A stretch of DNA of 44,509 nucleotides. Source: Hyphochytrium catenoides. Lineage: Eukaryota > Protista > Hyphochytriomycota. The position numbers and the translations under genes are program-made. Under the pieces are notes generated by a model. That model made no database searches. It was not told the DNA's origin and saw only the letters and a program-made list of their open reading frames with translations. The DNA lies in contig FLMG01000013.1 of assembly GCA_900088475.1 (NCBI GenBank), positions 1 to 44,509 on the forward strand. Direction: 5' to 3'. This document shows, one piece after another, positions 2,105 through 35,790 of the stretch. Positions within the stretch are counted from its first letter, which is position 1. Each line of letters starts with the position of its first letter.

Positions 2105-5100
2105 CTATAGGAAGCCTGTCATGGGATGACCATTCTGCTCTACGTCACGACGGAGCCTTGATACCTCGCTCGCAATGCGATGAGTCCTCCACATCTTTTT
2201 GATAAGTTCATAACGACTCGTGGAGAGGTAGAGAGGGCGGCCTCTCTGCAATCCAACGTCCTCCTCACCGTGAGAGTCTACGTAAGGCGAGGGTGCGGAA
2301 GCGGCAAGATGACCCCGTATAAAGCATACTTTGGCCTGATCTAACAAGAGAATTATGCCAATGCCCGCGCCACATTCGAGAGCGTGGCGGGTGCACTCAT
2401 TCACCTTTCGCCCTGCCACCATTGAACGGCAGCACCCACTGTGGGCACAGAGAAATTCTCCACAGATGAGGCACAGCGCAGGGTCCATTGGCGTATTGCC
2501 GCAATTGCGACACTCTTTGCCTATGTACGCACTGTAGAGCTTCTCATATAAGGCGGGGAGCTCCACAAGAGATGGTTGGGGCGGATAAGAGAAAATTTTC
2601 GAGGGCGGAAGGCTTTTGCGGGAGATCTCCTCATGATATAAAGCCACCTCCGGCAAGACATCCCTACGATTCTGCTTTGTCGACCAAGTGAGAATATCCC
2701 GCATCAGCTGCTTGTCAGTTCCTATGACTTCAGTCATGGTGGGAATGGGTGGTGCCGCCGCCATTACCTCTGTTAGACCAAGGCCTGGATCTGCAGCCAC
2801 AACTATGCATCTCCAAAGAAGGTATGCCTTCCTGAAGAAGGGCAAAGATCGCTCATAGATCTGCGCCATTTTCAGTCCTGCATCCTTTCGGGAAGGCGGC
2901 TTGGTCTTACTTTCCGAGGCAAGGAAGGATAATAAGGACTCGAGAGCATCCTCCTCGTTGCTTGGAAACGACCATGTAGAGTGCGGCTCAACTGTCAGGG
3001 GCATCTTCTCCTCTTTCTCCTCTTGGGCAACTTTGGAAGCTAGTCTGACAGGAGTTTTAAGAGCCCTTGCCGACCGCTTAGCCTTGGTGGTCGCAGCCCT
3101 TTTCCTTTGGTCAGTCTCAGATGGAGAACCTGCTCTGCCATCAGGTCTCCCGCGTTTCCGCGACGCTACAACTCTCTTGACAGAATCCAGCGAGGGAGGA
3201 GAGGCTACTTTTTCCGCTTCAGCCAACAAGCGGGCAATGTGAACGAGTTGTGCCACAAAATATAGCCGGAAGATGGCCCGGACTACCTCCAAGTCCTTTG
3301 CCAGGCATGACGCCACCACAAGCCCCTGATCATTGCAGGAAAAGGCGTCAGCTTATAGTTCAAGCACAACGTTAACTCCAATTAATGCACACACTATAGC
3401 GACAACCTTACCGNNNNNNNTGCTTACCTTCTGTCTTCGAGATGCCTCAACCCTTAAGACAGGGCAGCAGAATTTGACAACCGACGCCACTACGTGGTTG
3501 TGAAGTGCTCCCTGTAGTAACTTCCTCCACCGCGAGAAGCGGAGGACAGTACCGATGGAGAGAACGTCCCTTTCCAAGCCCGCAATAAAATCCAGGTCCA
3601 TGGTGGGTCGACCTGCCTCAGTCAATGTAAATGTTTTGTCAACTCCGCGACAACTGACCGTCGAGTCAAACTCCAGACATGTCAGTGAGTACGCTACAGC
3701 GGCCCAAAGGTCAGGTAGCCGCCCAACCTTCACTTCTCTCTTTTTCCTCCACTCCGTCGCAATACCCCCAAAGGCAGCCAGCAAGCCCGGTGTGCCCAGA
3801 TGGCGGAGCCTCTGGAGTGAGTCCGCCGCAACGGCCATAAGGCCAGAGCACTCAGAAGCTTCCTGGCTGCCATAACTCTTAGCCCCACTCTGATAGGTAG
3901 ACAGACAGTCAGTCCAAGCACTAGTAGAATACTGCTCCCTGGATAGACGGAGCCCAATAGCTTGCTCGTCTCTATCGACCCAAAGCTCTGGAGGTGTGTC
4001 GTCTACTAGAAGAGGCAAAATGAGGTTCCCCACTTGCTTGCAGAGTGGACAGAGGAATTCTTCCAAGACGGCTCTCGAGTCTAGCGCGGGATAGTCATCA
4101 GACTCCTGCGCAATACGGATTAGAGATGGTGCAACTGAGACATTGTAGCTCGTCCACAGGTTTGACTAGAAATTAATGTGAAAAAACAGCGAGAAATAGT
4201 CACGAGAGGGAGCAGCACTAACAGTGGAGGAAACATACTCTGCGTCCCTCACCTGTCTGTTGGCGTTCCTCTGGTACTCCAGGAGACACTCCACATGCAG
4301 GGAGTGTCTGCACGTTTGTATGAAGGTTCCCCAGCCTCTAAGAGTTAGGGACTCTAATATGCTCTCTGTTGGGTCCTCTAGTTCTTGCCGATCCCAGTCG
4401 GGATTCTCGTACCTAATGGACACGATACCTGTCTCGTCATCAATGCTGAAGCCTAGCGAGTGAAGGACACTCTGCTCATCCTCAATCCTGTCTAGCGTGT
4501 GCACTCGTCCAAGCCGCCGCCGTTCACAGGTCTTCACTTGCTTTGTAACTGCTTGTCGAGCTAAATGCCGGCGCACCTTGCCTTCAGGAGTCAACGCAAC
4601 CTCAGGCGGAGGGCGATAGGGGCTGGCAAGGACACTGGATCTCTGAGAACAACAGAGCTCATTAAGACAAGCGTTTAAGCGGTAGTTAGAAGTTTGTACG
4701 GAGGGGCCAAGTCGTACCTGGCATAAACCTATAAAACAGCCTTCCTTCTTTTTTGTGATCTTATCATGACAAAGAATGCAGGTTGATGGCTCCTGAATGC
4801 ACCCAGAGGAAGGATGTCGCCGTTCTACGGGTTTGCGGACCTTTCTTGACCGTTGTGTTTGACCTGCTGGCACCTTTCGCATCGAAGAAGCGCCCTGACT
4901 TACCCTTGGAAATGCTGCTGTACCAAGTGCTGCTCCGCTTTCACTGTCATAAGCCCCATCCTCACTGTCAAAGGCTTCGTCCATGGTCGACATCATGGCA
5001 GCAAACGCTTGCTGCTGCCTGGCGATAGCCTCCATTGCCCGCTTTCGGGCATCTTCTTTGACACCAGTATCCTTGCCCATCCCCTCCAATGCTTTTTTGG

Positions 5101-8100
5101 ACGAAGAACTAAGCGCCTTTCGCTGACTTTCGTCCTTCAAATATGCGGAAACAGCAGCTGCACAGTCGGGTGACTCAGCAGGAAGCTCCTCTATCAACCA
5201 GCTTACAGTTACTCTCTGTTCGTATGGTAGCTTGCTTTCTATCTCAGTATCCTTGAGCTGATAGTGTTAGAACAAAGAGGAGGTACTTAGGCACAAGAAC
5301 GGTTAGAAATGGAACTTAGGAGCCTCTTGCTTACCTGCATCAGCATCTCTATAATGGACAACTTTCCAGATTGAGGGGTCGTCCACATGCACCAATATCC
5401 TTCTTCTGGTTCAGGCTCTGCCAAAGCTGTGGAACTCACTAGGGTCCCAGAGAACTGATGTCGAGCATCTTCTTTCCGTAGCCTTGAAACCTGAAGAGCT
5501 AGGGAAAGTAGGTGCAGAGCTTGCGAGAAGAGTCTTTCCGTGACCACTACATCCTTATCATGNNNNNNNNNNNNNNNNNNNNNNNNNNNNNNNNNNNNNN
5601 NNNNNNNNNNNNNNNNNNNNNNNNACACTGCTTCATAAGTCGGGAAAGTGGGCGGAAGGCGGAGGAGAGGTTCTTGTTTCGCCTCATTCTTTGTCTGCTT
5701 CTGTCTCGCTTGAAGCCATCTGTCCCTCGCGTGCTCGTGATCCTCCTTAGTTAGATGTAGAAAGACTGGACTATAATCAAATATAGTGTCCGGCTTTATC
5801 TCATACTTTCCAGGTTCGAGACCATCCGGAGGGCGATAGACGGCAATATGGGTCAAAACCTAGGCAGAATGAGCAGCCGCTAATTTAGCTTCTTGCAAGG
5901 TCAAGTCTAACCGTAGTGGGCGGTAACATCAGTATCTATATACCTCCTCAACCAGTTGTTCTGGCAAATGGGACATGATATGGCAGCTCCCGGCAGCTTC
6001 CAGAAGCTCGCTAAATGTCCTGTTTCGGACACAGAGTTGATGCAGAAGTTCTAGCCGCAATGTCTCTTTTGCTGGGTCCTTTAGCACAGGTGTGATCGAG
6101 GGCACTTGTATGACCTGATATCACGATACGAAGTGAGAGCGCCACATCGGCACGGCATAACCTATGATCACTCTTACCATGGCCAGAAGGAGGTCAACAA
6201 ACTCTTCTGCCAGTGGGACCCAGTAATCTCCAGCACTGTCGCTAGGCCCGACAAGTCTAAACAGATCAAGCATCCGCGATAAGATCAACTTCGGGCCATA
6301 GATAGTGGTACCAAGCTGCATTCGTGAGCGCCATTAAAGACTGTGTTTTAGAAAAAAACATGAGCAATCTTTCTGTCTAACCTGAGCCGCGGCCATATCA
6401 GCGTCCCTCAGGTACATAGAATGTGGCAGCGACCGATAGTGCCATAGCTGAGAGCACATCTGCTCCTCCCCATTCCGGCGCCACATGCCAACTTGGACCT
6501 CGGCCCCCATTGCAAGACAGCGAAGTGGATTCTCCGCTAAAAGTAAGATACCTTCACCGGTTGACTTCTTCAACCACGACTGCGACTCAGAGTCTCTGAT
6601 GCTTGCCAGCAGCTCGGCCATTTTGGATCCTGGACATGTGGAGACCTTTCTAACGAGCAATGTGATGAAACGTGTCAAAGGTAGATGCATCGAGATGCCA
6701 GCAAAAGGTTCGAAGAGTCCCGCCGCAAGCTGCGCTTTGGCTTTCTCTTGGAGCATCCCAAGTCCTATTCTCGCTGCATTAATGGCTTGGTCCGTCGTAA
6801 CAGCTAAGACGAGACAGTCAGTCTAAGAACCGAAGTGCTTCTTACAGCTGTTGGACTCGCACCTCGCAACACACTGGAAACAGCATGGTGTAGATGCATG
6901 ACGAGATTAAAGGCACCAAACCATTGGTCTGTCTCATACTCCACATGAGGCTCTCCCTCTCTTCTTCTGATTTGCACATCTGCTCCCTACAGGACAAGGC
7001 CAGTCAGAGATTGCTCTACTGTCAAGANNGCATCAGTTTTATGCACCTCTTGGAAAGGGAGTAGTAACGGTTTAACCCACCTCTCATTGACAATAATCCT
7101 ATCTTCCAGATCCAACGAGAGCTTGGCCAGCCCCTCGGCCTCCTCCCTTGTCTTCAACAGCATATTGACGGCTGCCTTGAGGAACACCGTTATGGCATTC
7201 ATCCGCACAGGGCTTGGAAAGATGTCTTCCACACCCTTGCCCGCATAAGATAGTGAGGAGTGGCCTGGAACCAAGGCCTGGGAGCGCTTTTGCTCAGATT
7301 TGGCGACCCGTTGGGGTTGTTGTCTGCTTTTCTTTGTAGTCTCTGGAGCTCCCAGCGTCAGCATCAAAGAGGGAACGGTAAGGAACTGGACCGAAAGCTC
7401 AAAGATGTTCCTTTTGGAGCTTCCGCACCCATTACCATAATCCTCCATCATGTGGTCATAATGGGAAACGTAAGCCTTCGCCACTGCGGCCTTGAAGTCT
7501 GAATCCCCCTAAAGAGAAAAAGGTGAGAGGTCTCAGTGGGAAGGCAGGCTGAGAAAGAGGAGCTTCTCTGTACCATCAGTGTCTGCTCCAATGTGTTCAC
7601 CGAGCTTCCGACCATGCTAGAGAAGAACGGTTCAAGCCGTACCAACCTTTCAATGGTAGATTCACGACGGCGTTGAACCAGCTCACCGAATGGGTCTCGC
7701 CCATGAGCCGATGCAGTGTCCTACAGGCACATTTAGCTTATACATTGTTCGAGATACGCGGCGATTCGCACCTTAAAGACTGCAGCGGCCAGCTTGCTCG
7801 AAGCAGAGTTTCCGCGGCCAACAAGAGCCATAAAGGTCTCCCTCATCAGGTAGGCGAAGGGCTTATTCGTCATTTCGTTGATCCCAGAACCGCGCTTTCT
7901 CCAGAACCTCAACAAAGCAGAACTCCGGTCTTCCTCCGCTATCTGAGAAATGACGGTTTCTAGGTTCTTGAAAGGCATATCATCATACAAAGCTAAAAGA
8001 GCGGAGAGAGGGCTTCCCCGTGTCGTGACGTCCTTGAGAAAAGAGTTCCAATCTCCCCAGGCTTCTATCAAGGTAGACCGCATGCGACTAACAGACGGTA

Positions 8101-10158
8101 ATCTGAGTCCAAATACAATATCTTAGCAGGCACGATAATATAAGTCTTACCTGCGGACACTTGGGTCAAGAGGAGGCGTGAGGTTGTCCAGATAGCTGTA
8201 AGGATCGCCGTCGCAACTTGGAAAATTGTAAGCTGGTTCTCTAAGATCGCCTCGAGGAGCACACAGGGAACGGGCAACAAGCGCCCCACAAGCCTCAGAC
8301 ACCCCACATATCTCGTTAAGCCAGTGCGTAAGGCTGATAGCTCGATCCTCCACATCGGTCATCCNNNNNNNNNNNNNNNNNNNNNNNNNNNNNNNNNNNN
8401 NNNNNNNNNNNNNNNNNNNNNNNNNNNNNNNNNNNNNNNNNNNNNNNNNNNCATGCAAGCCTTCATTGCGCAATTCACTTGCAATGGCGCCACAATCAAG
8501 CGCGGAGCCAGCAGCAACTACAGCTTCGCCTTGATCGTCCATACGGCTGACCAGGACCATCGCCTCGTTCGCGCTGCAACCCGTTACTTTTCGCACTTTT
8601 TCAATGACCTGCATAAATATAAACAATGATATCAGCGCTAAGCTCTAGAGTGCAATTTCTGTGGACCAGTCTAGGCGATTATGGGCATCACCTCATCAAA
8701 CGTGTGAACCTCATCGTTAAAGAGGCGGACCACATAAGTATGCTCAGCCGATGACTCGAACGGGCAAATCTTATTCTGCCATGCCCTTAAATGCTCTTCT
8801 GCGGTCTTTAGGCGAGATTTGAGCTGTTGAACATAGTCGCCGACGATGTCATTGGAATTGTCCTCTTCTCCATAGGACATGTAGGACTCATCTGAGCTTG
8901 CGCTATTGAAGTCTTCGTCCAAGCGTTGCATTGTGTCTCTGCGGACAAGCTGTCAGTGAGTCTTCTGATACAGTCCTTTATCAGCATGATGCCTGCTCCT
9001 ACCTCACTCTTCCTCTAATGGCGAATTGTCCAAACTCTAGATCAACAATCGGGACAGGCGGCGGAGGAAAGGGCACTCTACCAGCATTACCACGCTGCCC
9101 TTCCCTCCGGGGCTGATCAACTGCCTCTTCCCGTACTTCTTCGGTATGCCAGCCTTCACCTTGGTCTGTCCCTTCACTAATGCCCTCTTCATGAGGTCTG
9201 TCAGTCTGAGAGCTGCGGCTGACCAGACTAGGTCTGCTTGGGCCTTTGCGACTGTACTTTTCTATAATTGTTCTACGATTGATAAACTCCTGCGGCGCTT
9301 CAGAGCGGACCTTCATAAAGCGATTGTACATATCTCGAACATCCTCTGTCATTTCTTCGAACATTTCCAGAGCAAGATGAGCCTCGTGGACGTACTGAAC
9401 CGCAGTATCTATGACGGTAGGGGCGAAACAGAAGTCTGGAAGGCTTTGTATTGCCTTCTCTCTATCCTCTCGGTTACTTCCCGGGTGCACCCAGCAGAAG
9501 CCCTTTGGATCCCAGGCCTATGATAGAGGTTAGTGTGAGCCAGATGTCGAGCGGCAAAGAGGTAACGGGCAAAAGACCAGATCATGGGTCAACACTAGGT
9601 ACAGACCTCTGGATCGCCGCAGTCGCAATTGCCTCCCTCTACAGTCCGAATAAATACAACCTCATGGCCCTCATGGTCACTGCATTGCATGCTTGTTAGT
9701 CGGGAGTGGGAACCATTCATGCTCCCATTTATTCCTGAGAGGACATACCTTCCCAAGTAACAGTCTCGGCACATCACACAGGTCTTATCTTTCCTGCAGC
9801 TCCGGCACGTGTACGCTATCTCATCTCTTGCAAAGACATGACCGCATACTCGGCGCTTCGTAGCGCAAAACGGGTCTCCCTTGCACCGTTTTCCATTGTC
9901 GTGAAGTAATGCGCAATCTTCTGAGACTTCTATGGATCTACCAGCACAGATCAAATGCTGAAGCCAGCTGTTGATCCCAGTGGAGTCACTCCTCAGGAAC
10001 ACATAGTTGTTCAAGAAAGCTCGAATGAGATCATCACTATCAACAACTGGGGAAGCTTTCTTTCGACTCTGACGCAAGGCTGGAGCCGAGCTTACAGCTG
10101 CCTCCTCGCGGTCATAAGCTGTCAATGACTTGCCACGACTTGCCCCGGAAGTCTTCAT
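2105..10158 (-). CDS. UBR1: UBR1/UBR2-type N-recognin E3 ubiquitin ligase (UBR box, ClpS-like domain, split RING-H2, UBR C-terminal domain); about 16 short introns
   Basis: Spliced UBR box CGHVF...YTCRSC...CVMCRDC...DHEGH...GNCDCGDPEAWDPKGFCWVH. ClpS-like VRLFNDEVHTFDEVIEKV. Conserved GMWRRNG and PHVEYE-W-GAFNL segments. RING-H2 CILCH...CRHSLHVEC...CPLCK. C-terminal CLICG...HALECGAGIG...PYVDSHGEED-GLQRGRPLYL. Junctions checked are GT-AG, often with CTAAC/CTGAC branch points. N gaps fall inside the gene. Confidence 0.95.
5563..5624. other. Assembly/masking gap (62 N) inside a UBR exon; similar gaps at 785-788, 3414-3420, 7028-7029, 8365-8451, 44178-44189
   Basis: Runs of n in the sequence. 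The reading frame is preserved across 5563-5624 and 8365-8451. Confidence 0.95.
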
Positions 10159-11623: not shown

Positions 11624-14600
11624 CTAAGTAGGGGAAGGCGGAGGCACTGCCCTGACAGCAACACCTTCATTCGTCTCCTTCATCTGCTCCAACTTGTCTA
11701 AGAGTAGACTTTGTCTCACTGCTCGGCCACCTTTGGTCAGGGGATTCACAAGCGGAGTCCTCTCCTTCTCCGGTGAGGATGCTGGAGAGGACTTGATCAT
11801 TTTCTTCACTTCGGCCAGCTTCTTCTTCACAGCCATCTGAGCTTCTAAGATCTTCATCTTGACCAGTGAGGTCTCTTCCACTTCCTGCTGGGGCGCTGAC
11901 AGCCACCACATAATGAACTCCATTAGCTCAATACTGCCGCTGTTATCGCTGTCAATCTGTCGGAACCGGGACTTGGCCTACAGGGCGAGATGGGCGCCGT
12001 CAGTCTCTTTGCATATCTACGGTCCGCTGATACCTGCCCTTGATGCTTGTTATGCCTGGGAATTGATCTACGACATAGCCTATCTTCCTACTCGCTTCTA
12101 CAAGTTCCTCAAAACGCTCTATCGCTCTCCTCTCCGTTCCTTACACAGTCTCTCTCTCTCTCTCTTACTCGCGACTGGCTCTTGTGTAGAGCTTTAGTTG
12201 GATTTGAGATAGGCTTCCCGGGGAGTTTTGCGCCTCTCTCTCTCTCTCATATCAAACCCGGCCAAGTATCTCCTTTACTGTGCATCTGCTTGTTTACCTG
12301 TTCAAGAGTCACAAGTTCTCCCAAATCGAAAAGTATCTGCTGGAACTCTTCGACACCAATGGAGCCACTGCCATCCTGGTCGAAGAGCTTAAAGGCAGCA
12401 GCCATTTGGTCCACCAGCCGCTGGGAAGCCACAAGGTAAGGGCGCATTTTCTGGGCTTCTGTGTCGCTTTGCAGCATCTGGGGCCACTCAGGAAGAGCAG
12501 AGAGAAGGAGCTCTTTTTGGGCACGAAGGCGAGCGAGGGAGAGGATCCTACGATACTTTTCTAATCTGTGGACTCTGAGCGCCAATTGCAGGTGGTTCTG
12601 GAGCTAGAGAGGAGAGAAAAAGAGTGCAGAGGATGCATTGAAAAAGGAGGAGAAAGAGAAGAAAAAGAGATTGCTGAGTTCCCTTCCCACAAGACGACAT
12701 AACCAAGAACTCTCACCTTTATATTCTCAACCTCCTTCGGCTCATCATCCTCAAACTCTGGAGCCACCGCCTCAGCGATAGCAGGAGAGATGACTAGGTC
12801 GGGCGATGGGATCGCCAACTGTTCAATGCCATTCTTACGTATGACAGCCTTCAAAGCGCAGTGGAAGAGTAGGGAAGTGATATATCAGGTTAGAGAAGGT
12901 GTGCCTTCATCTCTTCTGTACTACGGCTCACGAGACACTTACCAGTCTATCAACAGCTCGTTGTGCGAGCGACCGCCACTCGGCTCCATTGCTGGGCAGC
13001 CGCTGGAGTCCCAGAGTAGTCCGTGCTGTTTCCATAGAGAGGTAATAGCGGAGGGGAAAGCCAATTATGGAGGAGTGGGCTTCAAAGAAGAGTAGACTGC
13101 TCTTGTTCGTTTCTATGTTGTCTGTCAGAGGTGGTGCAGCTTTCCGCCTTTTTAGTCTGTAGCCGCGGTAGAGGACATCCTCCACATCTTCTAACCTATG
13201 CAAAGAAAAGGTCATTCTCACTGTCACCCAGTAATATACTCCTGATAGTTTCCGATGTGTGGTAAGGATGTTGAGCGAGAGTGAGAGACCGCTCCCGTCT
13301 TGCCCACTCTTCCTCGCGTGCAGTGTCTCTCTCCCTTCCTCCGGCCGTAGTAAAGCTCTGTCCCTGCTTTTATCTTCGTCTTTCTTTGGTTCAGAAAGCA
13401 GTCTGATCCTCTCCATGAGACTAGACAGAGAAGATAAAGAGAGGTCTCTGCCGCTCTCTGGGCCACCAAAGAGGGAAAGCAAATCGCATCCCCGCAGCAG
13501 AAGTCCGTATATAACATCTCCTAGTCTGTCATGTCGCAAGCTCGTGATTTGAACGTCTGAATTCTTTCCTGCAGAGATTATTCTCTTGAGGTGAGGAGAA
13601 ACAGTGTCCAAGCCTATTGATGCCTTGATTCTCTCCCTCATTAAGACTTTCCAGGACTTAGGCAACAGTTGCTTGTTTGATCCGCCGTCTTTGGTGAGAG
13701 AAATCCTTTGAGAGGAAAGAGAACTACTGTTTTTTGCCTGTGTCTCTTCCTCTCGCCTAATACCCTCCGGAGCCTGGAAAGTGACCAAAGAGCTGTCCGC
13801 TCCTCCCTTGGGCAGTGTAACGGCGGAGCTCTTTAGCTCTTGCTTGGGGCGAAGAGGGCGGGGGAGAGAGAGGGTCTGCAAAAATTCGCAAGCTCCCAAA
13901 TGAAGATGTTTGGCTTCATATAGAGTCAATATCATTAGTGCCTGAGAGAGAGGAAGAAGACCCTGGAAGAGTTCGTCCTTTTCAACGTGCTCTCCGATCC
14001 TCCTCTTCTTCTGCTCGTCTCCAGTCATCCTTGCATCTATGCCCAGGCCTTCTTCTGCTTTTGCGGTATAGTCTAGCAGCATTGAGGCGAGAGCCTTAGG
14101 GGTCAGATTCAGAGTCGCGCTGAGGCAAGTTAGAGTAATGGTGGAAGTTTCGTCGTTCCCTTCTATCCCCGTCATTGCTCCCAAGAGGTGGTCAATGGTG
14201 GGACTCTGCTGCAATGTTAGAGGGAGAGGCCGCTGGAAGAAATGTCCATAACGTTAGGGTGTGGGAGCACAATGGGATAGAGGCAGGACAACAGTACGGT
14301 CAGAGACGGGTTATGAGGCCTAGCCGAGGGCTGGGTTACTTGAGATCATAAAATCCTAAGTATACCAATAGCCGAACCCAAGACTGAGAAAGATGGACCA
14401 ACCAGAGCAGAACTTTACCAGCCCCTGAGCTTCTAGCAGAGACACAAGAACCCAAAAAAGGGACACCACAGAAGCCGAGAATGGAAATCTTTGCTAAGGT
14501 GGAAGGAGAATGCGCGAGCTTGGAAGGTAAAGAGACCTGGAAAAGCAAGAAGTGAAAGAGAGAAGATGCACAAAGGAGAGCATCCAGCACCTTGAGCATC

Positions 14601-20600: not shown

Positions 20601-23600
20601 GGCGGAACGACGGCGGAGAAACAAAATGGAAAAATACACGGGAAGAAGAGTTGCAGCGAGAGAGCAGCCAACCCTCTTTCCCCTAGGTACCTGCTGGTAG
20701 TCAATGTGTTCGGAGGAGTGAACAGTGACCAAACAATGGTCACCGTCTAGGCGCTGGGAGGAAAGAAAGCGCGGTTTCAGAAGACTCCGCACCGCCCGTG
20801 CAAGTCCTTGACTCTGAGCGGAAGAAACGGCCGCTTGAGCCGCCGCTGCAGTAGCGGTCTCGTAGAGAAGCTGGAAGGAGAGCAGCACGGGGTCAGCAAA
20901 CGAAGAGAAACATGCAAACGTGACTGTGGTATAACGGGTGAACGTGGTCCGACAGGAGTTAAGGCGCCCCCCTATAATTCTTGGATCTTTTTAGGTCTCT
21001 TGACGTATGTTTTCAGCTTCATCTGAACCTCTTAGCTCTGCCTCCTTAGCCAAACAAGCATTCGATTCGTTACCTGGCCCTATATTAACCTGTTCCTTTT
21101 TTCGTTCCCTTTCTCTCTCTCCGCGAACACTCCTTATCTCCCTTATCATCTAGCATTGTACACTCTGTCCGTCCAACTGCGTAGCTTACCCTCAGTGTCT
21201 TGACCCTTCTTAGGGCTTCGAATCTTCTCTTTGCCTCAAGTCTTCCCAACCTCCCTCTCAAGACTCTTTGAAGCAGGAAGAGAGCTCCTCGCTTCGCTTC
21301 TGTTCTTTGAATAAATATTTCAGCGTTTTGAATATCGAGTAGAAGGACATCTCCCTTGAGTTCTCTGCCTTGCTCCATCAGCTGAGCAATCCTTTCTGTG
21401 TCCACAATGACGAAGTCTTTGCGCATCTCGTGACGTAGAAGCTGACACGGACACGGAGATAAGCAACAGAGAGACGGAGATTGAAGGAGCGAGAGAGAGA
21501 GACAGGGAGAGAAAGAGATATCAACGAGACGTCATCACTTAGAGGAAAGAGTTACCCAAGAAAGCAAGAGGCAAGGACAAGCCTTGACAAAGCAAAACCT
21601 TTCAAGTTGTAGCTGTCGGATACACAGATCTAGGCAAGAAGGCATGGGGTGAAAGAGGATGAATACTTTGCTGATACGCTCTCGTTGCTGCGCAAGTTTC
21701 TCTCCTTTCTCTCTCAGCATTTTCTGACGCTTAAAGCGACGACTCTCCTTCCCTCTTGTCTCAAAGCTCGCCCAAGGCCCTAGGTTGGGTCTGAGGAGAA
21801 TAGAAGAGAGTAGAAAAACTTATGTTGAGAAGCTGAAAGACAAGAGAAAACCTGTCGAACAGAATCAACCGCTTAGGTTCAGCAGCAAAGGATGTACGAC
21901 GAACCAGAGACTAGCTGTCTATCTTTAACCGAGAAGTACTCAGAAGAGGAAAGAGATACAAAGTACTAATGGACAGATATACTGCATTTCGCCGCTTAGA
22001 GGCGATGGAGACAAGAGCAAACAAAGCAAAAAATAAGCATAGCAATGGGAAAGAGAGAAATAAGGCAGGGTAGCGGACCTGCAGAACTCTCCGGAGCGCT
22101 TATAAGCGGGTATTTCTCTTCTCTGTGGTACTTCGATTCTTGCGCCGTGGTCCTCATAGACAGCAATTTTCGTTTGATAATCAGGTGGAGGTCCTGTCTC
22201 TCCGTCTTCTTCTTCTTCTTCATCATCTTCAACTCCGTCATCGTCTTTCCCCTGACCCTTGACTGCCTCTCCCATCCCTTTGGGAAAGATTGAGAAGTGG
22301 CAGAGGGAGAGGCAAGCAAAAAATTGTCAGGATAGGTTGCCAGGAGCAAAAGAGGTTAGCGACAAGAAGACTAAAAGAGAGTAAATAACGAGAAAGAAAG
22401 AGACAGGTAAGAAGTAAGCTTTCACCATCTCCATTCGCTCTGACCCAAGAGCTCATATCTTCTTCGTTCAACAGAAGGGACAAACCGCATGCCAAGGATT
22501 GGAGCACAGCAGGGGGCGTCATTGCATGGAAGAGGGAAGATAGTACTGGAAGGGACCTGCCGCACAAGTTATGTATAGAGAGAGACCCCACACAGTGGGA
22601 GAGAGAAAGTGAGTCGAAAGAGAGAGAGGAAGAGGAACACAAGCCACTTCGTATAGACCAAATGGAGTGGAGAGGAGCACATTTACTGAGGCGGAGCTCT
22701 CAGATACACACAGGAGCTGACTCGCTCGCGAAAGAAAGGACAAATTGAAAGAGGGGGAGGCACATCACGATAAAAGCGATAAAGGGATAACTAGCGGCTG
22801 GCTAAGCAGAACCAACCACAGAGAGCCAAACCTTTAAGGAGCCTAAAGGAGGGAGAGAAGTTGATATAGAGCGATATTAGAGAGCGAGAGAGGAATCTAC
22901 CGCTGGAAAGCTGCTCCGTTTATCCTGCTATCGCTCACAATTCCCTTAGTCCTTGAGTCTAGAGGAAGTGGCCCATTAGGACTCTTCTCTTCATTCTTAA
23001 TGGACGACGTCAGTTCTTCAGTTTGCCCTTCTCGTCCTGCCTCTTTGCTAATAGAGCCAAGAGAGTTGCGTTTCCTCTCTTTCTCTCTCTTCTTCTTCTC
23101 CTCCTCAGTCAGGAGCACATGATCCAGATTAAGGCCAAGGAGAAGCGGATTACGGGAGAAAGGGAAGGACGGGCCAAGGTATGCTCGGAGAGCTTGGAAC
23201 TGCTCTAGAAAGTCCAAGTCGGAAATCATCTAGGATGAAAGAGGAGAAGAACGAGCCATTAGCGTCTCAATCTCTCTCTCTCTCAGTCTCTCTCTCTAGC
23301 TACATCTGTTTGTTCTTCTGCTGCTTCTACCGTCTGCCATGACCACTGCCTCATATTTGCCTCTAGTAATCCCTTTCTCAAGCTCTCTCTCTCTCCCTCA
23401 AACCCTTTCTCGTCTCTCGGTCTTCAAAGAAGATGGCCCTCTCTCCGGGTCATTTTTCCACTAGTTTGCTGACCTTGAGTAGATAATTCGCCCCGTTCCA
23501 CATAAAGGAAGGGACCCACTTCTGCTGGCCGTCCATCGCCTTAACTGCACACTCTTCGCACACCGAGGGCCCCTCTCCTTCGCTCTCCACCCCGAAGTGG

Positions 23601-23667
23601 AAGCCACACGAACGAAAAATGAAGCTGCCTCAAGATCAGAAGGTGAGTGCGCCAGACAGACACGGTC

Positions 23668-23734
<67 letters not shown>

Positions 23735-25363
23735 AAGGGAGAAAACAAAAAAAGGAATTGGGGCTGTGGAACAAGAGCACCGAGCTGAGTCTAGAGAGAG
23801 ACAAGGAAGTGCTATGCAATCCAGACCATACTAATGTGCACCATGTTGAAGAGAATCTGTGACTATACGGGGAAGTCAGTAAAAGATAGAAGGTAGGTAA
23901 AAGACTGGCACAGACCGCTTCCTGGGGATCCTATCGAATGTCGTCTTCAGTCTGATCGCCTCCTTGATCGCAGCCGCATCGTACGCTCGAGCGGCTTCGT
24001 CCTGTCAGTCCTCATTAGCTGAGGCAAGAAGGTGGAAGAATGATCTCGAGTAGCGAGGAACGAGAGACGAAGGGAGAGAGAAAGAGATGGGCCAAGAACG
24101 GAAAGGAGAGAGAGCATTCGCGAGACTTTTTGGCGAAACGAGGCCATTGAAGATGCTAGATCTGCTGAACCTTCGTAGGATAGACGCCAAGATAGATTAG
24201 ACGCCTCAAACGCATCCCTTCTCGGTCGACAGGACGCCGAAAGCGCTTGATCTAGACAGTCAGAGAGGCAAAATGAGAGCGGAAGAAAGGAAAAGTAAAA
24301 GATGTGGACAGAGAAAAGAGAGACAGTGAGGTCCTAGTGCCATGTAGATGCGATGATAAGACCGGAATCTGCATGAGGTAAGATAGGGGAGAGACAAAGG
24401 ATGATAGAGGCAAGTGAACAAGTAACTAACGGGAATACGGACAAGGAGAGCTCGAGCTCGCAAGAGAAATAGGAGTTGAGGTAGAGCAAGCCTCAACGGA
24501 GCCAAGCCTACGTAGGAGAAAGGTGAAAACACTGGGAGAGAAAAAAGGGAAATTGGGCTGTGTGCGCTCTGTACTTTGGATTCATAGGCTGCGGACCCGC
24601 CGTAGAGCTGCTCGCCGTCCACTGTTAGACTGACCGACCAGCCACCAGTTCCCCTTGCCAGCCCTCCACCCCGACGTGGCCCATGCTCAGCTGCGACGCG
24701 GCCGAGATGTTCCGCGTGTGAGCGCCAAACAGTGACAGCCTGCAGTGCAGAGGAGATATTTATAAGATTAGCAGTGACATAGGATAGGGCCGTGGGCCGC
24801 AAAGGACGGAGCACCATCAGGGAGGGAGGAAGAGAGAAGGAAAGACAAACAAGAAGCCTGACCCAGCTTGAGACGAGGGAATCGCCATTCATCATCCTTC
24901 TCAAAACCTTTGTCCGTTCTCCCCGGGTACTAACTTCTGCCATCCCTTTAGACGGCTCTAGTGCTTCTCTCTCACGCTTCGCAGCCCTTATCACAACTCT
25001 ACGCTCTTTGTTCTCTACCTTGAGCTCGTCTTTCTCTATGTTTTGTCTCTCTCTCCACAAAATGTTCTTTACCTCTAGCAGCTTGGTACTGACTGTTCTG
25101 ATAGTGTTAAGAACCAGGACCAGCTCTGAGACATGAGAGAACTCCACGCCGCCGACAACCTCCTGGAAACGCTGATCGGACTTTTTACCCAGGCGACGGG
25201 CCATCTAGAGAAATCGAACACGGTAAGAGAAACAGAGAGAAAAATGAACGGAGTAAACATTGGCGTAGAATGCGGGAGCTAGGTGAGAGAAAGGTAGCCA
25301 CGACCTCAGGTCTCCAAGAGAAAGAAAGGAGAGAAGAGAAGAGAAGAGGGAGAAGAGAAGAGA

Positions 25364-29956: not shown

Positions 29957-30403
29957 GCCTTCCTCCTTTTGGCCGTTAAACCCTTGAGGTTCTCTTAATC
30001 GCCATCAACTCTTGAAGAGCGAGCGACAGAGAGAGAGAGAAGACTGAGGAGTGAGGGAGAAATAGAGAGGGATGGAGATATCAGAGAAGAGAGAGAGAGA
30101 GAGAGAGATAGCAGGGAAGAGAAATAGAGAGATTCGGGGTTATCATACCCCTTTCGCGGTTCTCGTGCCCTATTCACATTCCTTATATCCTTGTGCCTCT
30201 GGCATATCCCCCGCTGCTAGGGACGGGAGAATGGCCGAACGGCAGGACCGAGAAGAAGTCAGTGTTTTGTCTCCTTCTCTCTCTCTCTCTCTTTCTCCTT
30301 TATAGTTCCTTTTGAGCTTGATCATCGCGTCTTTCTTCACTAGCGACCCCTTCGCCGTGGTTCTGATGGATGGAGCCTGCAATATTCGTCTCTCCCTTTC
30401 CAT

Positions 30404-30475
30404 GTCTCTCTCTCTCTGTCTCTCTTTCTGCCTTTCTTGGCTCTCTCTCTCTTTTTCCCTCTCTCTCTCTCTCTG

Positions 30476-30569
<94 letters not shown>

Positions 30570-30570
30570 T
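30404..30570. repeat. Compound (CT)n microsatellite with a periodic GT interruption, between head-to-head genes
   Basis: Directly visible. G interruptions at 30475, 30497, 30517, 30537 and 30557. Confidence 0.95.
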
Positions 30571-30997
30571 TCCCCCCTCCCTTTTCCTCTGCTCAACACC
30601 TTCCCCGCGCCGATTCGTTAACAGGATGGACAAGACCTATTCCAAATCCGAACAAAGAATATCACCTATATTTCTAGCTGCATAAAGCCCCATTTACAGT
30701 ATCCTCCACGTGTGAAAAACAAGAGCGGATCTATTATTGGGTAAGTAGCCTTAATACTATGAATTTGTGCCTTGACATCTTGAAAACTTGATTTTTACCG
30801 ACAGTTGAGAGGGTGGCCACACAAATCTTTCGAAGCTCTTTCCAGAACAGAGACGCACAGACAGATCTCAGACAGAGATCGGACGGAGATCATCGCCAAT
30901 TATAGGCCCAGCGAGCTGAATAAGGGCTTGTACTTCGAGTCCTACTGTTTAATTAGACGAGGATTTGGTTGGGAAGGACAAAGACCAGAGCGGAAAT

Positions 30998-33339: not shown

Positions 33340-35790
33340 TTAAGGGCTAGATTGCTTTCTAAGCGCTGGCGAGCTGCGCGTGGGCAAAGACACGGAACGA
33401 GCTAAAGATCCGACACGGGAAGAAAAAGTGGCCGCGGATGTCGTTCCCTCTGCAAGTGGAGAAAAGGATGGCGTCTGATTGAGGAGAGAGCTGCCCAGAG
33501 TACTGGCGTCTGTCCCAACCTGCAGTTGATCCAAGCGGTCTTGACGTGTAAACATCGCCTTACGCTTGAGATGCAGGCGGACAGAGGTCGAATTCATCTC
33601 TCGAACTTCCCTTCCTGCAAGTTCTCTCCTAACCTCTCCCTGCAACCTATCAAGAATCTCTCTCATGCTGGGCCTGCTTTCTGGATCCTCCTTCATACAA
33701 TCTAACATCAGCTGCCTTCTTACTGGCTGGCATGTATCCGGGATCGTTGGTCGAAGCCCTTGGTGCGCTACCGCCATCATAATCTTCAACCCATTCTTCC
33801 CATAACCTTGATAGGGCAACTTGCGTGTCTCAAACTCAGTCAGAACAACGCCAAAGCTGTAGCAATCCGCTTTTTCATTGTACGGCTCTCCTCGGATCAC
33901 CTCTGGGGCCAGCCAGAAGGGGGTACCAGCAAAAGTCGTTAGGTCATCCTCGTAGAACTTCCTACTCCGGGCAAAGTCAGACACTTTGCACCCGAAGGTA
34001 GCTGAACAGAGCAAGTTCCTACTCTTGAGATCGCGATGCACCACGGGTGGATCACTGGCATGCAAGTAGAGCATCCCTTGAGCAGCATCTATCGCCATCT
34101 TCAGCAGCGGGTCTGACCAGGTAAGAATGAGGTTGCAGGCCAATAAGCTTTGAACGTCACGGCGCTCAAGGTATTCCACCACCATGCAAATGTTAGAATA
34201 GTTGTCCCAGCTTGCCCCGATAAACTGCACTATATTGGGATGACGAAGACACGCCATCAACTCGATCTCAGCCTTGAAGACCGAGATCACCTGCTCGTGG
34301 ATTTTGTCCCTTAGGATTCGCTTGACCGCCACTTTGGAGCCTCTGTAGGTTGCCAGAATGACCTCAGTGATAGTGCCAGTATATATTTTCTTCTCCAGCT
34401 TGAGATGCGAGAAAGGGATTTTGACTTCTTCCAAGATCTGAGCGGTCTCTCTGTCTTCCATTACCGCCTTCACAGCTCTTCTCTCTTCAGGAGTCTCTTC
34501 AAAGTGCGTAAGAGCCGCTTCCGCCCTCTCTAGATTGTCTTTTAGTTCTTCGTTCTTCTCATCAAAGTAGTGAATGACTAGGAAGGTCCGCCTCTTGGTT
34601 CTATCCGTGTAGTAAGACGCAGTGGCGATAAGGATGACAGAGAGCGCGTTCGTGAAGATGAAGGCCAACCAGCTCCTGCCGTCTACATAGTCCAAAGAGT
34701 GGGGAGGAGGAAGAGAAAAGCTGTAGGAGATAATAATTATCCACGAAGCCACGCAAGAGAGAGAGATCAGCACGCTGACATGAGGAAAGTCCAGCTGCAT
34801 GGTGAGGCCAAGAGATCCTCCAATGAGAGAAATAAGAGTGTTGATATGGGCGATGAAGGACATGTATATCACGTCATCTCTAGCCCTAACAAAGGCCCCA
34901 AAGGTGAGCCCCTGGAAGAAAGGATCAGAAAGCGGAGCAGAGCACTCGTTTTTAGGAGACACGAAGAACTTGCTCCTCTCTGCAAACTGCCTCACAGACA
35001 ACGTGGCCTGATAAGACAGCCATATCTGGATCCCAACCATTAAAAGTAGTAGGGTGCAGCATGCCCACGTCTTCCATGGTACTCTGAGGCGAAGACAGGG
35101 ACAGCGAAAGCCTCTGGGGGTAGATATCAGAACAAAAGGCACTGCCAGCACGAGGTAGAGGCACTGTGCATATTCATCCACCCTGGAAAAGTCTCTGGGC
35201 CACAGATTGAGACCGTCCAGCTTCTGCCCGCGTACAGAGAAGGCAAGATAGAGCACCACGTGCATTATAATGGTCATTCCTACCAACCACCGTGCGCGAT
35301 AATATGCATCGTGTGTACAGGTATCTTGATATTGCGCCTCCACATTCAGATCTAAGAACTTGTTGGTTGTCCTATGCATTAGCTTGCCATCATGACTGAA
35401 GTCGCTGATGGAAGCGCGAGAAAGAGAAGAATAATTTTCCCCATTCACTAATGCCCCTTGCGGGTTGAGATTGGGGTCTTCGAAGGAGGAGGGATATGTC
35501 TCCCCATCCGTACATTGTGGCTCTCTCAAACCATCAACACGGACTTCGGACGGCCCTGACAGCTTGCGCAGCGGCGTGTGCTTTGTAGGCTTGTCTACAT
35601 GGGGATTTGAAGCTGTTAGCGAAGAACAGCATAAAAACCCGGGCGGTGCCTCACTTACCCGTGAATATTTGCATGACGGCATGGTAGGCGTCAAAGTTGA
35701 CAGCACTATCTCCTGAGTGATTATCATCATTGCCCGCCGTTTGGCAGACACCTGGCCCCTGGGAGTTTCGTCTCCTTCTAGGGGAGCCAC
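33340..35790 (-). CDS. Single-exon membrane TKL-group protein kinase with an N-terminal 6-TM region; start uncertain (first in-frame ATG at 35730)
   Basis: VAVK, FKAEIELM, HPNIVQFIG, HRDLKSRNLL, KVSDFA, GTPFWLAPE, ADCYSFGVVL and GLRP motifs. Six hydrophobic segments lie between about 34600 and 35290, followed by a coiled-coil linker. Confidence 0.9.
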   Translation of the reverse strand: MAPLEGDETPRGQVSAKRRAMMIITQEIVLSTLTPTMPSCKYSRVSEAPPGFLCCSSLTASNPHVDKPTKHTPLRKLSGPSEVRVDGLREPQCTDGETYPSSFEDPNLNPQGALVNGENYSSLSRASISDFSHDGKLMHRTTNKFLDLNVEAQYQDTCTHDAYYRARWLVGMTIIMHVVLYLAFSVRGQKLDGLNLWPRDFSRVDEYAQCLYLVLAVPFVLISTPRGFRCPCLRLRVPWKTWACCTLLLLMVGIQIWLSYQATLSVRQFAERSKFFVSPKNECSAPLSDPFFQGLTFGAFVRARDDVIYMSFIAHINTLISLIGGSLGLTMQLDFPHVSVLISLSCVASWIIIISYSFSLPPPHSLDYVDGRSWLAFIFTNALSVILIATASYYTDRTKRRTFLVIHYFDEKNEELKDNLERAEAALTHFEETPEERRAVKAVMEDRETAQILEEVKIPFSHLKLEKKIYTGTITEVILATYRGSKVAVKRILRDKIHEQVISVFKAEIELMACLRHPNIVQFIGASWDNYSNICMVVEYLERRDVQSLLACNLILTWSDPLLKMAIDAAQGMLYLHASDPPVVHRDLKSRNLLCSATFGCKVSDFARSRKFYEDDLTTFAGTPFWLAPEVIRGEPYNEKADCYSFGVVLTEFETRKLPYQGYGKNGLKIMMAVAHQGLRPTIPDTCQPVRRQLMLDCMKEDPESRPSMREILDRLQGEVRRELAGREVREMNSTSVRLHLKRKAMFTRQDRLDQLQVGTDASTLGSSLLNQTPSFSPLAEGTTSAATFSSRVGSLARSVSLPTRSSPALRKQSSP

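What the first reader, a model, noticed from the sequence alone, without database searches (positions are those of the whole stretch)
23130..25204. Hidden AP2/ERF-like domain plus putative Zn site inside a giant IQ/EF-hand protein
Seen: splicing five small exons gives IRTVSTKLLE|AVTVWR...GGWSVSLTVDGEQLY...RLIYLGVYPTK|DEAARAYDAAAIKEA...FRSCGFH...VCEEC...PSFMWNGANYLLK|MISDLDFL...FPFSRNPLLL. The AP2 signature is cut by an intron and is invisible in the ORF track. It has an approximately 25-aa insertion between the W-x-V strand and YLG, and is followed by C-x2-H...C-x2-C. From recollection (unverified), the flanks resemble one uncharacterised protist domain (LR...E-x-I/V-x-x-WR ... F-x-W-x-G-x-NYLLKM-x-x-DLDFL...NP). 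If so, AP2 + Zn site is inserted into that domain. The same polypeptide carries an IQ motif and two EF-hands. Inference: a Ca2+/calmodulin-responsive protein with a nucleic-acid-binding fold, or an AP2 fold repurposed in a structural/flagellar protein. I do not know this architecture as a characterised system.
Basis: partly seen in the sequence, partly recalled or inferred. Interest (0 to 1): 0.75.

Follow-up and report, generated by a model that had tools for sequence, protein, structure and literature searches.

The report
Intron-split AP2 domain in protist gene
Several small exons of a large protist gene together encode a divergent copy of the AP2 DNA-binding domain; the domain is real but a familiar kind, and its proposed zinc site and its link to calcium-sensing parts are unproven.

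Summary
The exons exist as described, on the minus strand with GT..AG borders and compatible phases. Tested one exon at a time, three consecutive exons match consecutive parts of an AP2 profile: hhalign P 0.0055, 0.0066 and 1.9e-6. The helix exon is the best of 1718 six-frame segments of the window. The coded heptapeptide E-A-A-x-A-Y-D occurs only three times in the 61-Mb genome, and the other two sites are in AP2 domains. So a divergent AP2-type domain split by introns is real.

The rest is weaker:
- The Cys/His motif is present, but it has no relatives and folds at low confidence.
- No relative of the flanks was found, so the remembered "protist domain" is unsupported.
- The IQ match is a loose regular expression that also hits non-coding frames, and Pfam finds no IQ.
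- The EF-hands are real but lie 11 kb downstream. One transcript joining them to AP2 could not be shown.
- The first junction (TKLLE|AVTVWR) is doubtful.

The joined (spliced) protein was not searched or folded, as the operators ruled.

Most likely this is a large, lineage-restricted AP2-domain protein with a basic insertion in the sheet. I rate it a new member of a known kind, of moderate to low interest. Other AP2-fold genes were noted earlier in this genome.

The parts
24863..25204 (-). Exon upstream of the AP2 part. It starts after an acceptor at 25205. Both are in frame.
   Evidence: sequence; the stretch 25072-24863 is purine-rich with a positive in-frame codon score, like exons.
24575..24739 (-). 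Exon 2: a short helix, then three beta strands that make up the AP2 sheet, including G-W-S-V-S-L-T-V.
   Evidence: translation; hhalign to AP2 profile columns 15-38, P 0.0055; against this genome's canonical AP2, shuffle p 0.0005. AlphaFold pLDDT 72, strands 23-30, 33-40, 43-51.
24171..24251 (-). Exon 3: 81 nt, phase 0 to 0. Very basic (9 Lys/Arg of 27 residues). It ends in the canonical third strand R-L-I-Y-L-G-V-Y-P-T-K.
   Evidence: hhalign columns 32-41, P 0.0066; local AP2 HMM positions 22-31; recovered exactly by a crude ab initio parse; residue counts.
23916..24001 (-). Exon 4: the AP2 alpha helix D-E-A-A-R-A-Y-D-A-A-A-I-K.
   Evidence: hhalign probability 89.6%, P 1.9e-6, columns 43-56; best of 1718 six-frame segments, HMM positions 33-45; one of only 3 such sites in the genome.
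23474..23624 (-). Exon 5: the C-x2-H-x15-C-x2-C motif (putative metal site), then a predicted hairpin K-W-V-P-S-F-M-W-N-G-A-N-Y-L-L-K.
   Evidence: AlphaFold pLDDT 51, with the motif part under 50; weak AP2-like match, P 0.047; single copy, no relatives.
22901..23229 (-). Exon 6. It starts M-I-S-D-L-D-F-L and contains a basic cluster K-K-K-R-E-K-E-R-K-R. It ends at a donor (22939|22938 or 22901|22900) or at the TAG at 22899-22897.
   Evidence: single copy; no true relative among 1.84 billion representatives.
21190..21441 (-). Downstream exon carrying the IQ-like string L-Q-x3-R-G-x3-R.
   Evidence: regular-expression hit, with 4 further hits in non-coding frames; no Pfam IQ; splice sites.
11627..12603 (-). 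Two exons with an EF-hand each (12603-12250 and 11977-11627). The reading frame stops at 11627.
   Evidence: EF-hand_6 at 30.5 bits, over the cut-off; the second hand at 18-19 bits, under the cut-off; the gene call on the related contig also carries EF-hand hits.

Best explanation
Exons 2, 3 and 4 (24739-23916, minus strand) together encode a divergent but genuine AP2-type domain inside a large, many-exon, coiled-coil-rich gene that has no detectable relatives.

Anatomy:
- Exon 2 gives the three-stranded sheet.
- Exon 3 adds a strongly basic loop plus a canonical strand (L-I-Y-L-G-V-Y).
- Exon 4 gives the helix (E-A-A-R-A-Y-D).

The two arginines that canonical AP2 domains carry on the second strand are serines here, while the inserted exon supplies nine Lys/Arg.

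Most likely (inferred, not shown) the module still binds nucleic acid, with the basic insertion taking over backbone contacts. The protein would then act as a large nuclear regulator built like the giant single-AP2 proteins of other protists. A basic cluster in exon 6 could serve as a nuclear import signal.

The Cys/His motif may bind a metal, but nothing here shows it. A link to Ca2+ through the EF-hand pair 11 kb downstream is possible only if one transcript spans 30 to 11.6 kb, which is unproven.
For: - Exon borders and translations.
- hhalign of each exon alone against an AP2 profile (A1: 11 phage HNH-AP2 domains plus this genome's canonical AP2). Exon 2 matches columns 15-38 (P 0.0055), exon 3 columns 32-41 (P 0.0066), exon 4 columns 43-56 (P 1.9e-6). 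They lie in genomic order. Fisher combination is about 2e-8 (my arithmetic).
- Unfiltered six-frame HMM scan of all 1718 open segments of the window. Exon 4 ranks 1st (10.8 bits, E 0.04) and exon 3 ranks 7th. The HMM coordinates 22-31 and 33-45 abut across the 24171/24001 junction.
- Genome-wide pattern for E-A-A-x-A-Y-D: 3 sites in 61 Mb. The other two lie in AP2 domains, one over the Pfam cut-off and one a sub-cut-off half-domain match. The reversed control gives 0.
- Other AP2 domains of this genome are also cut by introns.
- AlphaFold of exon 2 alone: three strands, pLDDT about 80 in the sheet.
- A crude ab initio parse recovers exons 3 and 4 exactly.
Against: - Pfam PF00847 gave no hit to any single exon. 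It did not flag this locus in the six-frame genome search.
- phmmer against PDB sequences and tblastn against phages found nothing with single exons.
- The spliced protein was not scored or folded as a whole, so there is no family-threshold hit and no fold match.
- The fragment model of exon 2 has no significant structural neighbour.
- Basic residues on strand 2 are missing (alignment), which could mean loss of DNA binding.
- No transcript evidence exists for any junction, and no orthologue is available to show conservation.
Confidence: 0.6

Rival explanations
1. One giant Ca2+-responsive AP2 protein. The AP2 exons, the IQ-like exon and the C-terminal EF-hand pair are one polypeptide of roughly 3000 residues, so Ca2+ (directly or through calmodulin) controls a nucleic-acid-binding fold.
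For: - All coding-like blocks from about 30.0 to 11.6 kb are on the minus strand. They alternate with pyrimidine-rich, intron-like gaps.
- The one clear tandem intergenic stretch (11627-10158) is not pyrimidine-rich.
- In-frame donors and acceptors allow exon 6 to run on.
- The EF-hands are real.
Against: - No transcript or orthologue shows continuity.
- Exon 6 can also end at the TAG at 22899-22897, and the next coding block starts with an ATG at 22275.
- A crude parse broke the region into several genes, though it is unreliable.
- The IQ string is a low-specificity pattern, with 4 of its 5 hits in non-coding frames and no Pfam IQ.
Confidence: 0.3
2. The AP2 fold is kept but repurposed. The domain no longer binds DNA and serves as a protein-binding or structural module in a coiled-coil (cytoskeletal or flagellar) protein.
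For: - Serines replace the strand-2 arginines.
- Neighbouring exons are rich in coiled-coil-like sequence.
- Earlier notes of this scan report AP2 folds in non-transcription contexts in this genome (unchecked).
Against: - The inserted exon is strongly basic, net about +7, which fits nucleic-acid binding.
- The Y-L-G and E-A-A-R-A-Y-D core is well kept.
Confidence: 0.2
3. Chance resemblance: the AP2 signature is a coincidence of short motifs in spliced reading frames.
For: Single exons give no Pfam, PDB or phage hits.
Against: - There are three collinear exon matches.
- Exon 4 is the top hit of an unbiased window scan.
- HMM coordinates abut at a canonical phase-compatible intron.
- The heptapeptide is AP2-specific genome-wide.

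Confidence: 0.05

Closest known systems
AP2/ERF DNA-binding domain (Pfam PF00847), in the form found in phage and bacterial HNH-AP2 homing endonucleases and in this genome's canonical AP2 gene (G000:C3463)
   Same: Collinear match to the sheet and the helix: the G-W-x-V-x-L strand, the V-D-G turn, Y-L-G-x-Y-x-T, and the E-A-A-R-A-Y-D-A-A-A helix.
   Different: - About 30 extra residues before the Y-L-G strand, most of them on their own exon.
- Strand-2 arginines replaced by serines.
- No HNH nuclease part.
- No Pfam-threshold hit in exon-by-exon tests.
Giant single-AP2 proteins of protists (the ApiAP2 type in Apicomplexa; my own knowledge of the family)
   Same: A very large protein in which a roughly 60-residue AP2 domain is the only recognisable DNA-binding part, set among low-complexity and coiled-coil sequence.
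   Different: A different lineage: earlier notes call this genome a stramenopile near oomycetes (unchecked). No sequence relationship outside the AP2 core was found. The extent of the gene is unproven.
CAMTA, the calmodulin-binding transcription activators (CG-1 DNA-binding domain plus IQ motifs; PMC4516887, PMC3621073)
   Same: If the one-gene model holds, a DNA-binding domain and Ca2+/calmodulin-related elements would sit in one polypeptide.
   Different: The DNA-binding fold differs (AP2, not CG-1). There are no TIG or ankyrin parts. The IQ is not supported by Pfam. EF-hands are not a CAMTA feature. That the parts share one gene is not shown.
Plant ANT-type AP2 repeat with an insertion in the first AP2 domain (my own knowledge, not tested here)
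   Same: Shows that an AP2 domain can tolerate an insertion in the sheet region.
   Different: The insertion here is about three times longer, strongly basic and encoded by a separate exon. No homology to the plant insertion was tested.

Membership tests
AP2/ERF domain (PF00847) | Sequence match to the family profile at or above the curated threshold | tested here: not met
   Exon by exon there was no Pfam hit. The locus was not flagged in the six-frame genome search. The spliced protein as a whole was not scored (joined step left out). A self-built AP2 profile matches all three exons collinearly.
AP2/ERF domain (PF00847) | Core motif: third strand x-W/Y-L-G-x-F/Y-x-T followed by the helix E-E-A-A-x-A-Y-D-x-A-A | tested here: met
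   I-Y-L-G-V-Y-P-T-K | D-E-A-A-R-A-Y-D-A-A-A spans the 24171/24001 junction. The coded E-A-A-x-A-Y-D is found only in AP2 genes elsewhere in the genome.
AP2/ERF domain (PF00847) | Three-stranded antiparallel sheet packed against a C-terminal helix | tested here: inconclusive
   AlphaFold of exon 2 alone gives three strands at pLDDT about 80. The packing against the helix needs the spliced protein, which was not folded. Fragment fold searches gave nothing.
AP2/ERF domain (PF00847) | Basic and aromatic DNA-contact residues on strands 2 and 3 (Arg and Trp in AtERF1; established knowledge) | tested here: inconclusive
   Trp of strand 2 is kept. The two Arg after it are Ser (W-S-V-S-L against W-R-A-R-I). 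Tyr replaces Trp before L-G. Arg-Arg precedes the Y-L-G strand.
AP2/ERF domain (PF00847) | Binds DNA | not testable with these tools
   Needs EMSA, PBM or DAP-seq.
HNH-AP2 homing endonuclease | HNH nuclease domain next to the AP2 domain | tested here: not met
   No Pfam hit in exons 1, 5 or 6. The Cys/His motif follows AP2 and has no HNH signature.
Zinc-binding module after AP2 | Four Cys/His ligands conserved among relatives and folded as a knuckle or ribbon | tested here: inconclusive
   The four ligands are present. There are no relatives to test conservation. AlphaFold pLDDT is under 50 over the motif.
IQ calmodulin-binding motif (PF00612) | Match to the IQ profile | tested here: not met
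   No Pfam hit at E up to 1. The loose regular expression hits 5 places in six frames, 4 of them in non-coding frames.
EF-hand pair | Two adjacent EF-hand loops matching the Pfam models | tested here: met
   The first hand scores 30.5 bits (cut-off 25). The second scores 18-19 bits, below cut-off, but has a canonical D-x-D-x-S-G loop.
CAMTA-like Ca2+/calmodulin-responsive DNA-binding protein | DNA-binding domain and calmodulin- or Ca2+-binding elements in one polypeptide | not testable with these tools
   No transcript or orthologue data could be reached. Composition hints at one transcription unit, but a stop and restart at 22897/22275 is possible.

The most novel reading that the evidence does not exclude
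A single transcript from about 30 to 11.6 kb encodes a giant protein of roughly 3000 residues. In it, an AP2-type nucleic-acid-binding domain with its own basic insertion exon, and possibly a second degenerate AP2-like unit and a metal site, is coupled to a C-terminal EF-hand pair. That would be a direct Ca2+-sensing AP2 regulator, an analogue of CAMTA built from different parts and so far undescribed.
Probability: 0.15. Interest if true: 0.6.

Novelty: new member of a known kind. Interest (0 to 1): 0.3.

Why it matters
AP2 is the main DNA-binding fold of plant and apicomplexan regulators, yet it is sparsely catalogued in stramenopile-type protists. Here its domains are cut by introns, so six-frame or ORF-based scans miss them: the Pfam model flagged only two loci in 61 Mb. 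This locus shows that exon-aware searches find more of them. It also offers a natural variant in which a basic exon sits inside the sheet while the usual strand-2 arginines are gone, which is useful for asking how the fold contacts nucleic acid. If the EF-hand link were real, it would be a new way to couple Ca2+ to an AP2 fold, but that is not shown.

Tried and rejected
Searches that found nothing:
- Pfam on single exons. The only result was a weak DUF7797 hit to exon 1 (E 0.19), which did not ring in the genome and appears in no paper.
- phmmer against PDB sequences with exons 2, 3 and 4.
- tblastn of exons 2 and 4 against phages.
- Word-index protein search with the exon 5 reading frame and with the 314-residue reading frame over exons 1-2.
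- The full-library search with exon 6. Its only hit was a 3678-residue tandem-repeat protein (P0002), in which a weak match is summed over about 50 repeats. I reject it as spurious.
- A metagenome scan with exon 5, and one with the spliced 24171|24001 junction as a DNA pattern.
- Language-model look-alikes for exon 6 and for the 441-residue exon, which scored at chance level.
- Fold searches with the exon 2 fragment model.

Leads that did not help:
- The related Logan contig L001 (96% identical) covers only 19563-6352 and misses the AP2 exons. Its divergence is too even to mark exons.
- Exon 3 as a duplicate of the end of exon 2 is not significant at the DNA or protein level.
- Codon-usage profile and a home-made exon-chain parser. 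The signal is too weak to settle gene borders: the parser splits the EF-hand pair and reads through intron 1.

Full report
WHAT IS THERE

The window is contig C3996 of a 61-Mb assembly in 4759 contigs. Earlier notes of this scan treat the genome as a stramenopile near oomycetes (unchecked by me).

- exon 2: 24739-24575
- exon 3: 24251-24171
- exon 4: 24001-23916, ending in phase 2
- exon 5: 23624-23474
- exon 6: from 23229

Every border is GT..AG and the phases fit. Introns 2, 3 and 4 are pyrimidine-rich like the other introns of this region. An upstream exon ending at 25484 joins in frame to the exon that starts at 25204. The ATG at 25204 therefore need not be the start codon.

IS IT AP2?

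I searched the spliced model exon by exon, by reference. The joined protein was not searched, scanned or folded, as the operators ruled.

Standard libraries were blind to pieces of 27-55 residues:
- no Pfam hit
- no PDB sequence hit
- no phage tblastn hit
- the PF00847 six-frame search of the genome flagged only two other loci

I then built an AP2 profile from this genome's canonical AP2 gene (C3463, 36 bits to PF00847) and from phage HNH-AP2 domains found with it.

hhalign of each exon alone against that profile gave:
- exon 2: columns 15-38, P 0.0055
- exon 3: columns 32-41, P 0.0066
- exon 4: columns 43-56, P 1.9e-6, probability 89.6%

The matches are collinear and in genomic order. Fisher's combination is about 2e-8 (my arithmetic; P-values for single sequences are rough).

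Exon 4 came first (10.8 bits, E 0.04) and the end of exon 3 came seventh. Their HMM coordinates (22-31 and 33-45) abut across the 24171/24001 junction.

A DNA pattern coding E-A-A-x-A-Y-D occurs three times in the whole genome. One site is in the canonical AP2 gene, one in a second AP2 gene that is itself split by an intron, and one is here. The reversed control pattern gave none.

I conclude that a genuine, divergent AP2-type domain is encoded here. I put this at about 0.85. The lower confidence on the best explanation (0.6) covers its inferred function as well.

ANATOMY OF THE DOMAIN

AlphaFold on exon 2 alone (single sequence, pLDDT 72) gives a helix and then three strands at residues 23-30, 33-40 and 43-51. 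The sheet therefore sits in exon 2.

Exon 3 is an 81-nt, phase 0-0 exon. It adds a very basic stretch (9 Lys/Arg and 2 Asp/Glu in 27 residues) and ends in the canonical strand L-I-Y-L-G-V-Y-P-T-K. Exon 4 is the helix.

Relative to canonical AP2, about 30 residues are extra before Y-L-G. The two arginines after the strand-2 tryptophan are serines.

Because exon 3 is symmetric, skipping it would keep the frame and would give near-canonical spacing. Whether it is constitutive is unknown. A duplication origin for it was not supported.

THE OTHER CLAIMS

Zinc site. C-x2-H-x15-C-x2-C is present. The exon has no relatives and folds at pLDDT 51, under 50 across the motif. The site stays putative.

Flanking "protist domain".
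- Exon 6 (50 residues) against 1.84 billion representatives gave only a spurious tandem-repeat protein.
- The reading frame over exons 1-2 found nothing.
- Exon 5 found nothing.
- Language-model look-alikes were at chance level.
The recollection is not supported.

First junction. The junction TKLLE|AVTVWR is doubtful. The 333-nt "intron" is open and in frame, and its first 210 nt are purine-rich with a positive codon score. A second in-frame donor, TGG|GTCAGG, lies at 24863/24862.

IQ motif. The regular expression hits five places in six frames of the window, four of them in non-coding frames. Pfam sees no IQ.

EF-hands. Both are real. They lie at 12603-12250 and 11977-11627, and the frame stops at 11627.

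ONE GENE OR SEVERAL?

A separate PRT6/UBR1-type ubiquitin ligase gene runs from the ATG at 10158 to 2108 (zf-UBR 42 bits, PRT6_C 191 bits). The EF-hand gene therefore ends before it.

For one transcription unit:
- From about 30.0 to 14.3 kb, purine-rich blocks alternate with pyrimidine-rich gaps that look like introns.
- The known tandem intergenic stretch (11627-10158) is not pyrimidine-rich.

Against it:
- Exon 6 can also end at the TAG at 22899-22897, and the next block begins with an ATG at 22275.
- My crude parser cut the region into several genes, though unreliably.

The only related DNA found is a Logan contig, 96% identical. It covers 19563-6352 and misses the AP2 exons. No transcript data could be reached. 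I put AP2 and the EF-hands in one polypeptide at roughly 0.3-0.4.

MECHANISM

Shown:
- an intron-split AP2-type core with a basic inserted exon
- a lysine/arginine cluster in exon 6
- coiled-coil-like neighbouring exons

Inferred:
- The module binds nucleic acid, with the insertion compensating for the lost strand-2 arginines.
- The protein is a large nuclear regulator of the kind seen as giant single-AP2 proteins in other protists.

VERDICT

The zinc site, the IQ motif, the flanking domain and the single-polypeptide architecture are not. This is a new member of a known kind. The basic exon inside the sheet is its one unusual feature. Interest is moderate to low (0.3).

The scan has already noted other AP2-fold genes in this genome (s1-371151, s1-331065). 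I used them as leads only.

Noticed in passing
window 2108-10158, minus strand: A complete-looking PRT6/UBR1-type N-recognin E3 ligase gene: UBR box at 42 bits, PRT6_C at 191 bits, and a ClpS-like stretch around 8700. Several runs of N fall inside it, near 8450 and 5600.
   Followed up: partly
window 23474-23080, minus strand (exons 5-6): A possible second, degenerate AP2-like unit. K-W-V-P-S-F-M-W-N-G-A-N-Y matches AP2 profile columns 19-34 (P 0.047) and Q-A-L-R-A-Y matches columns 44-49 (P 0.15). The phase-0 intron after L-L-K sits at the same place as the exon 3/4 intron after P-T-K. Weak; it could mean an old tandem AP2 pair.
   Followed up: partly
window 23473-23230, minus strand (intron 5): This intron is purine-rich on the sense strand, unlike the pyrimidine-rich introns around it. 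It has stops in the exon 5 frame seven codons past the donor.
   Followed up: no
L003 (G000:C1430), L017 (G000:C1845), L004 (G000:C1658): Other AP2 domains of this genome are also cut by introns inside the domain. One sits next to a PHD finger. The Pfam six-frame search therefore undercounts AP2 genes here (2 loci flagged, at least 5 present).
   Followed up: partly
L001 (Logan SRR28521206 contig, 13462 bases), equal to window 19563-6352: A public sequencing run holds genomic DNA 96-99% identical to this window. It is a close strain, a haplotype or a sister species. Its gene calls carry the same EF-hand and UBR hits.
   Followed up: partly
window 12931-14253, minus strand: A single 441-residue open exon with no Pfam family and no relatives beyond the 95%-identical Logan copy. 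Language-model look-alikes are HEAT/ARM/TPR-type solenoids at chance-level scores.
   Followed up: partly
window 30170-30640: A long GA/CT microsatellite-like tract where strand composition flips. It is probably the divergent region between this minus-strand gene and the plus-strand kinase gene noted at 34580-35370.
   Followed up: no
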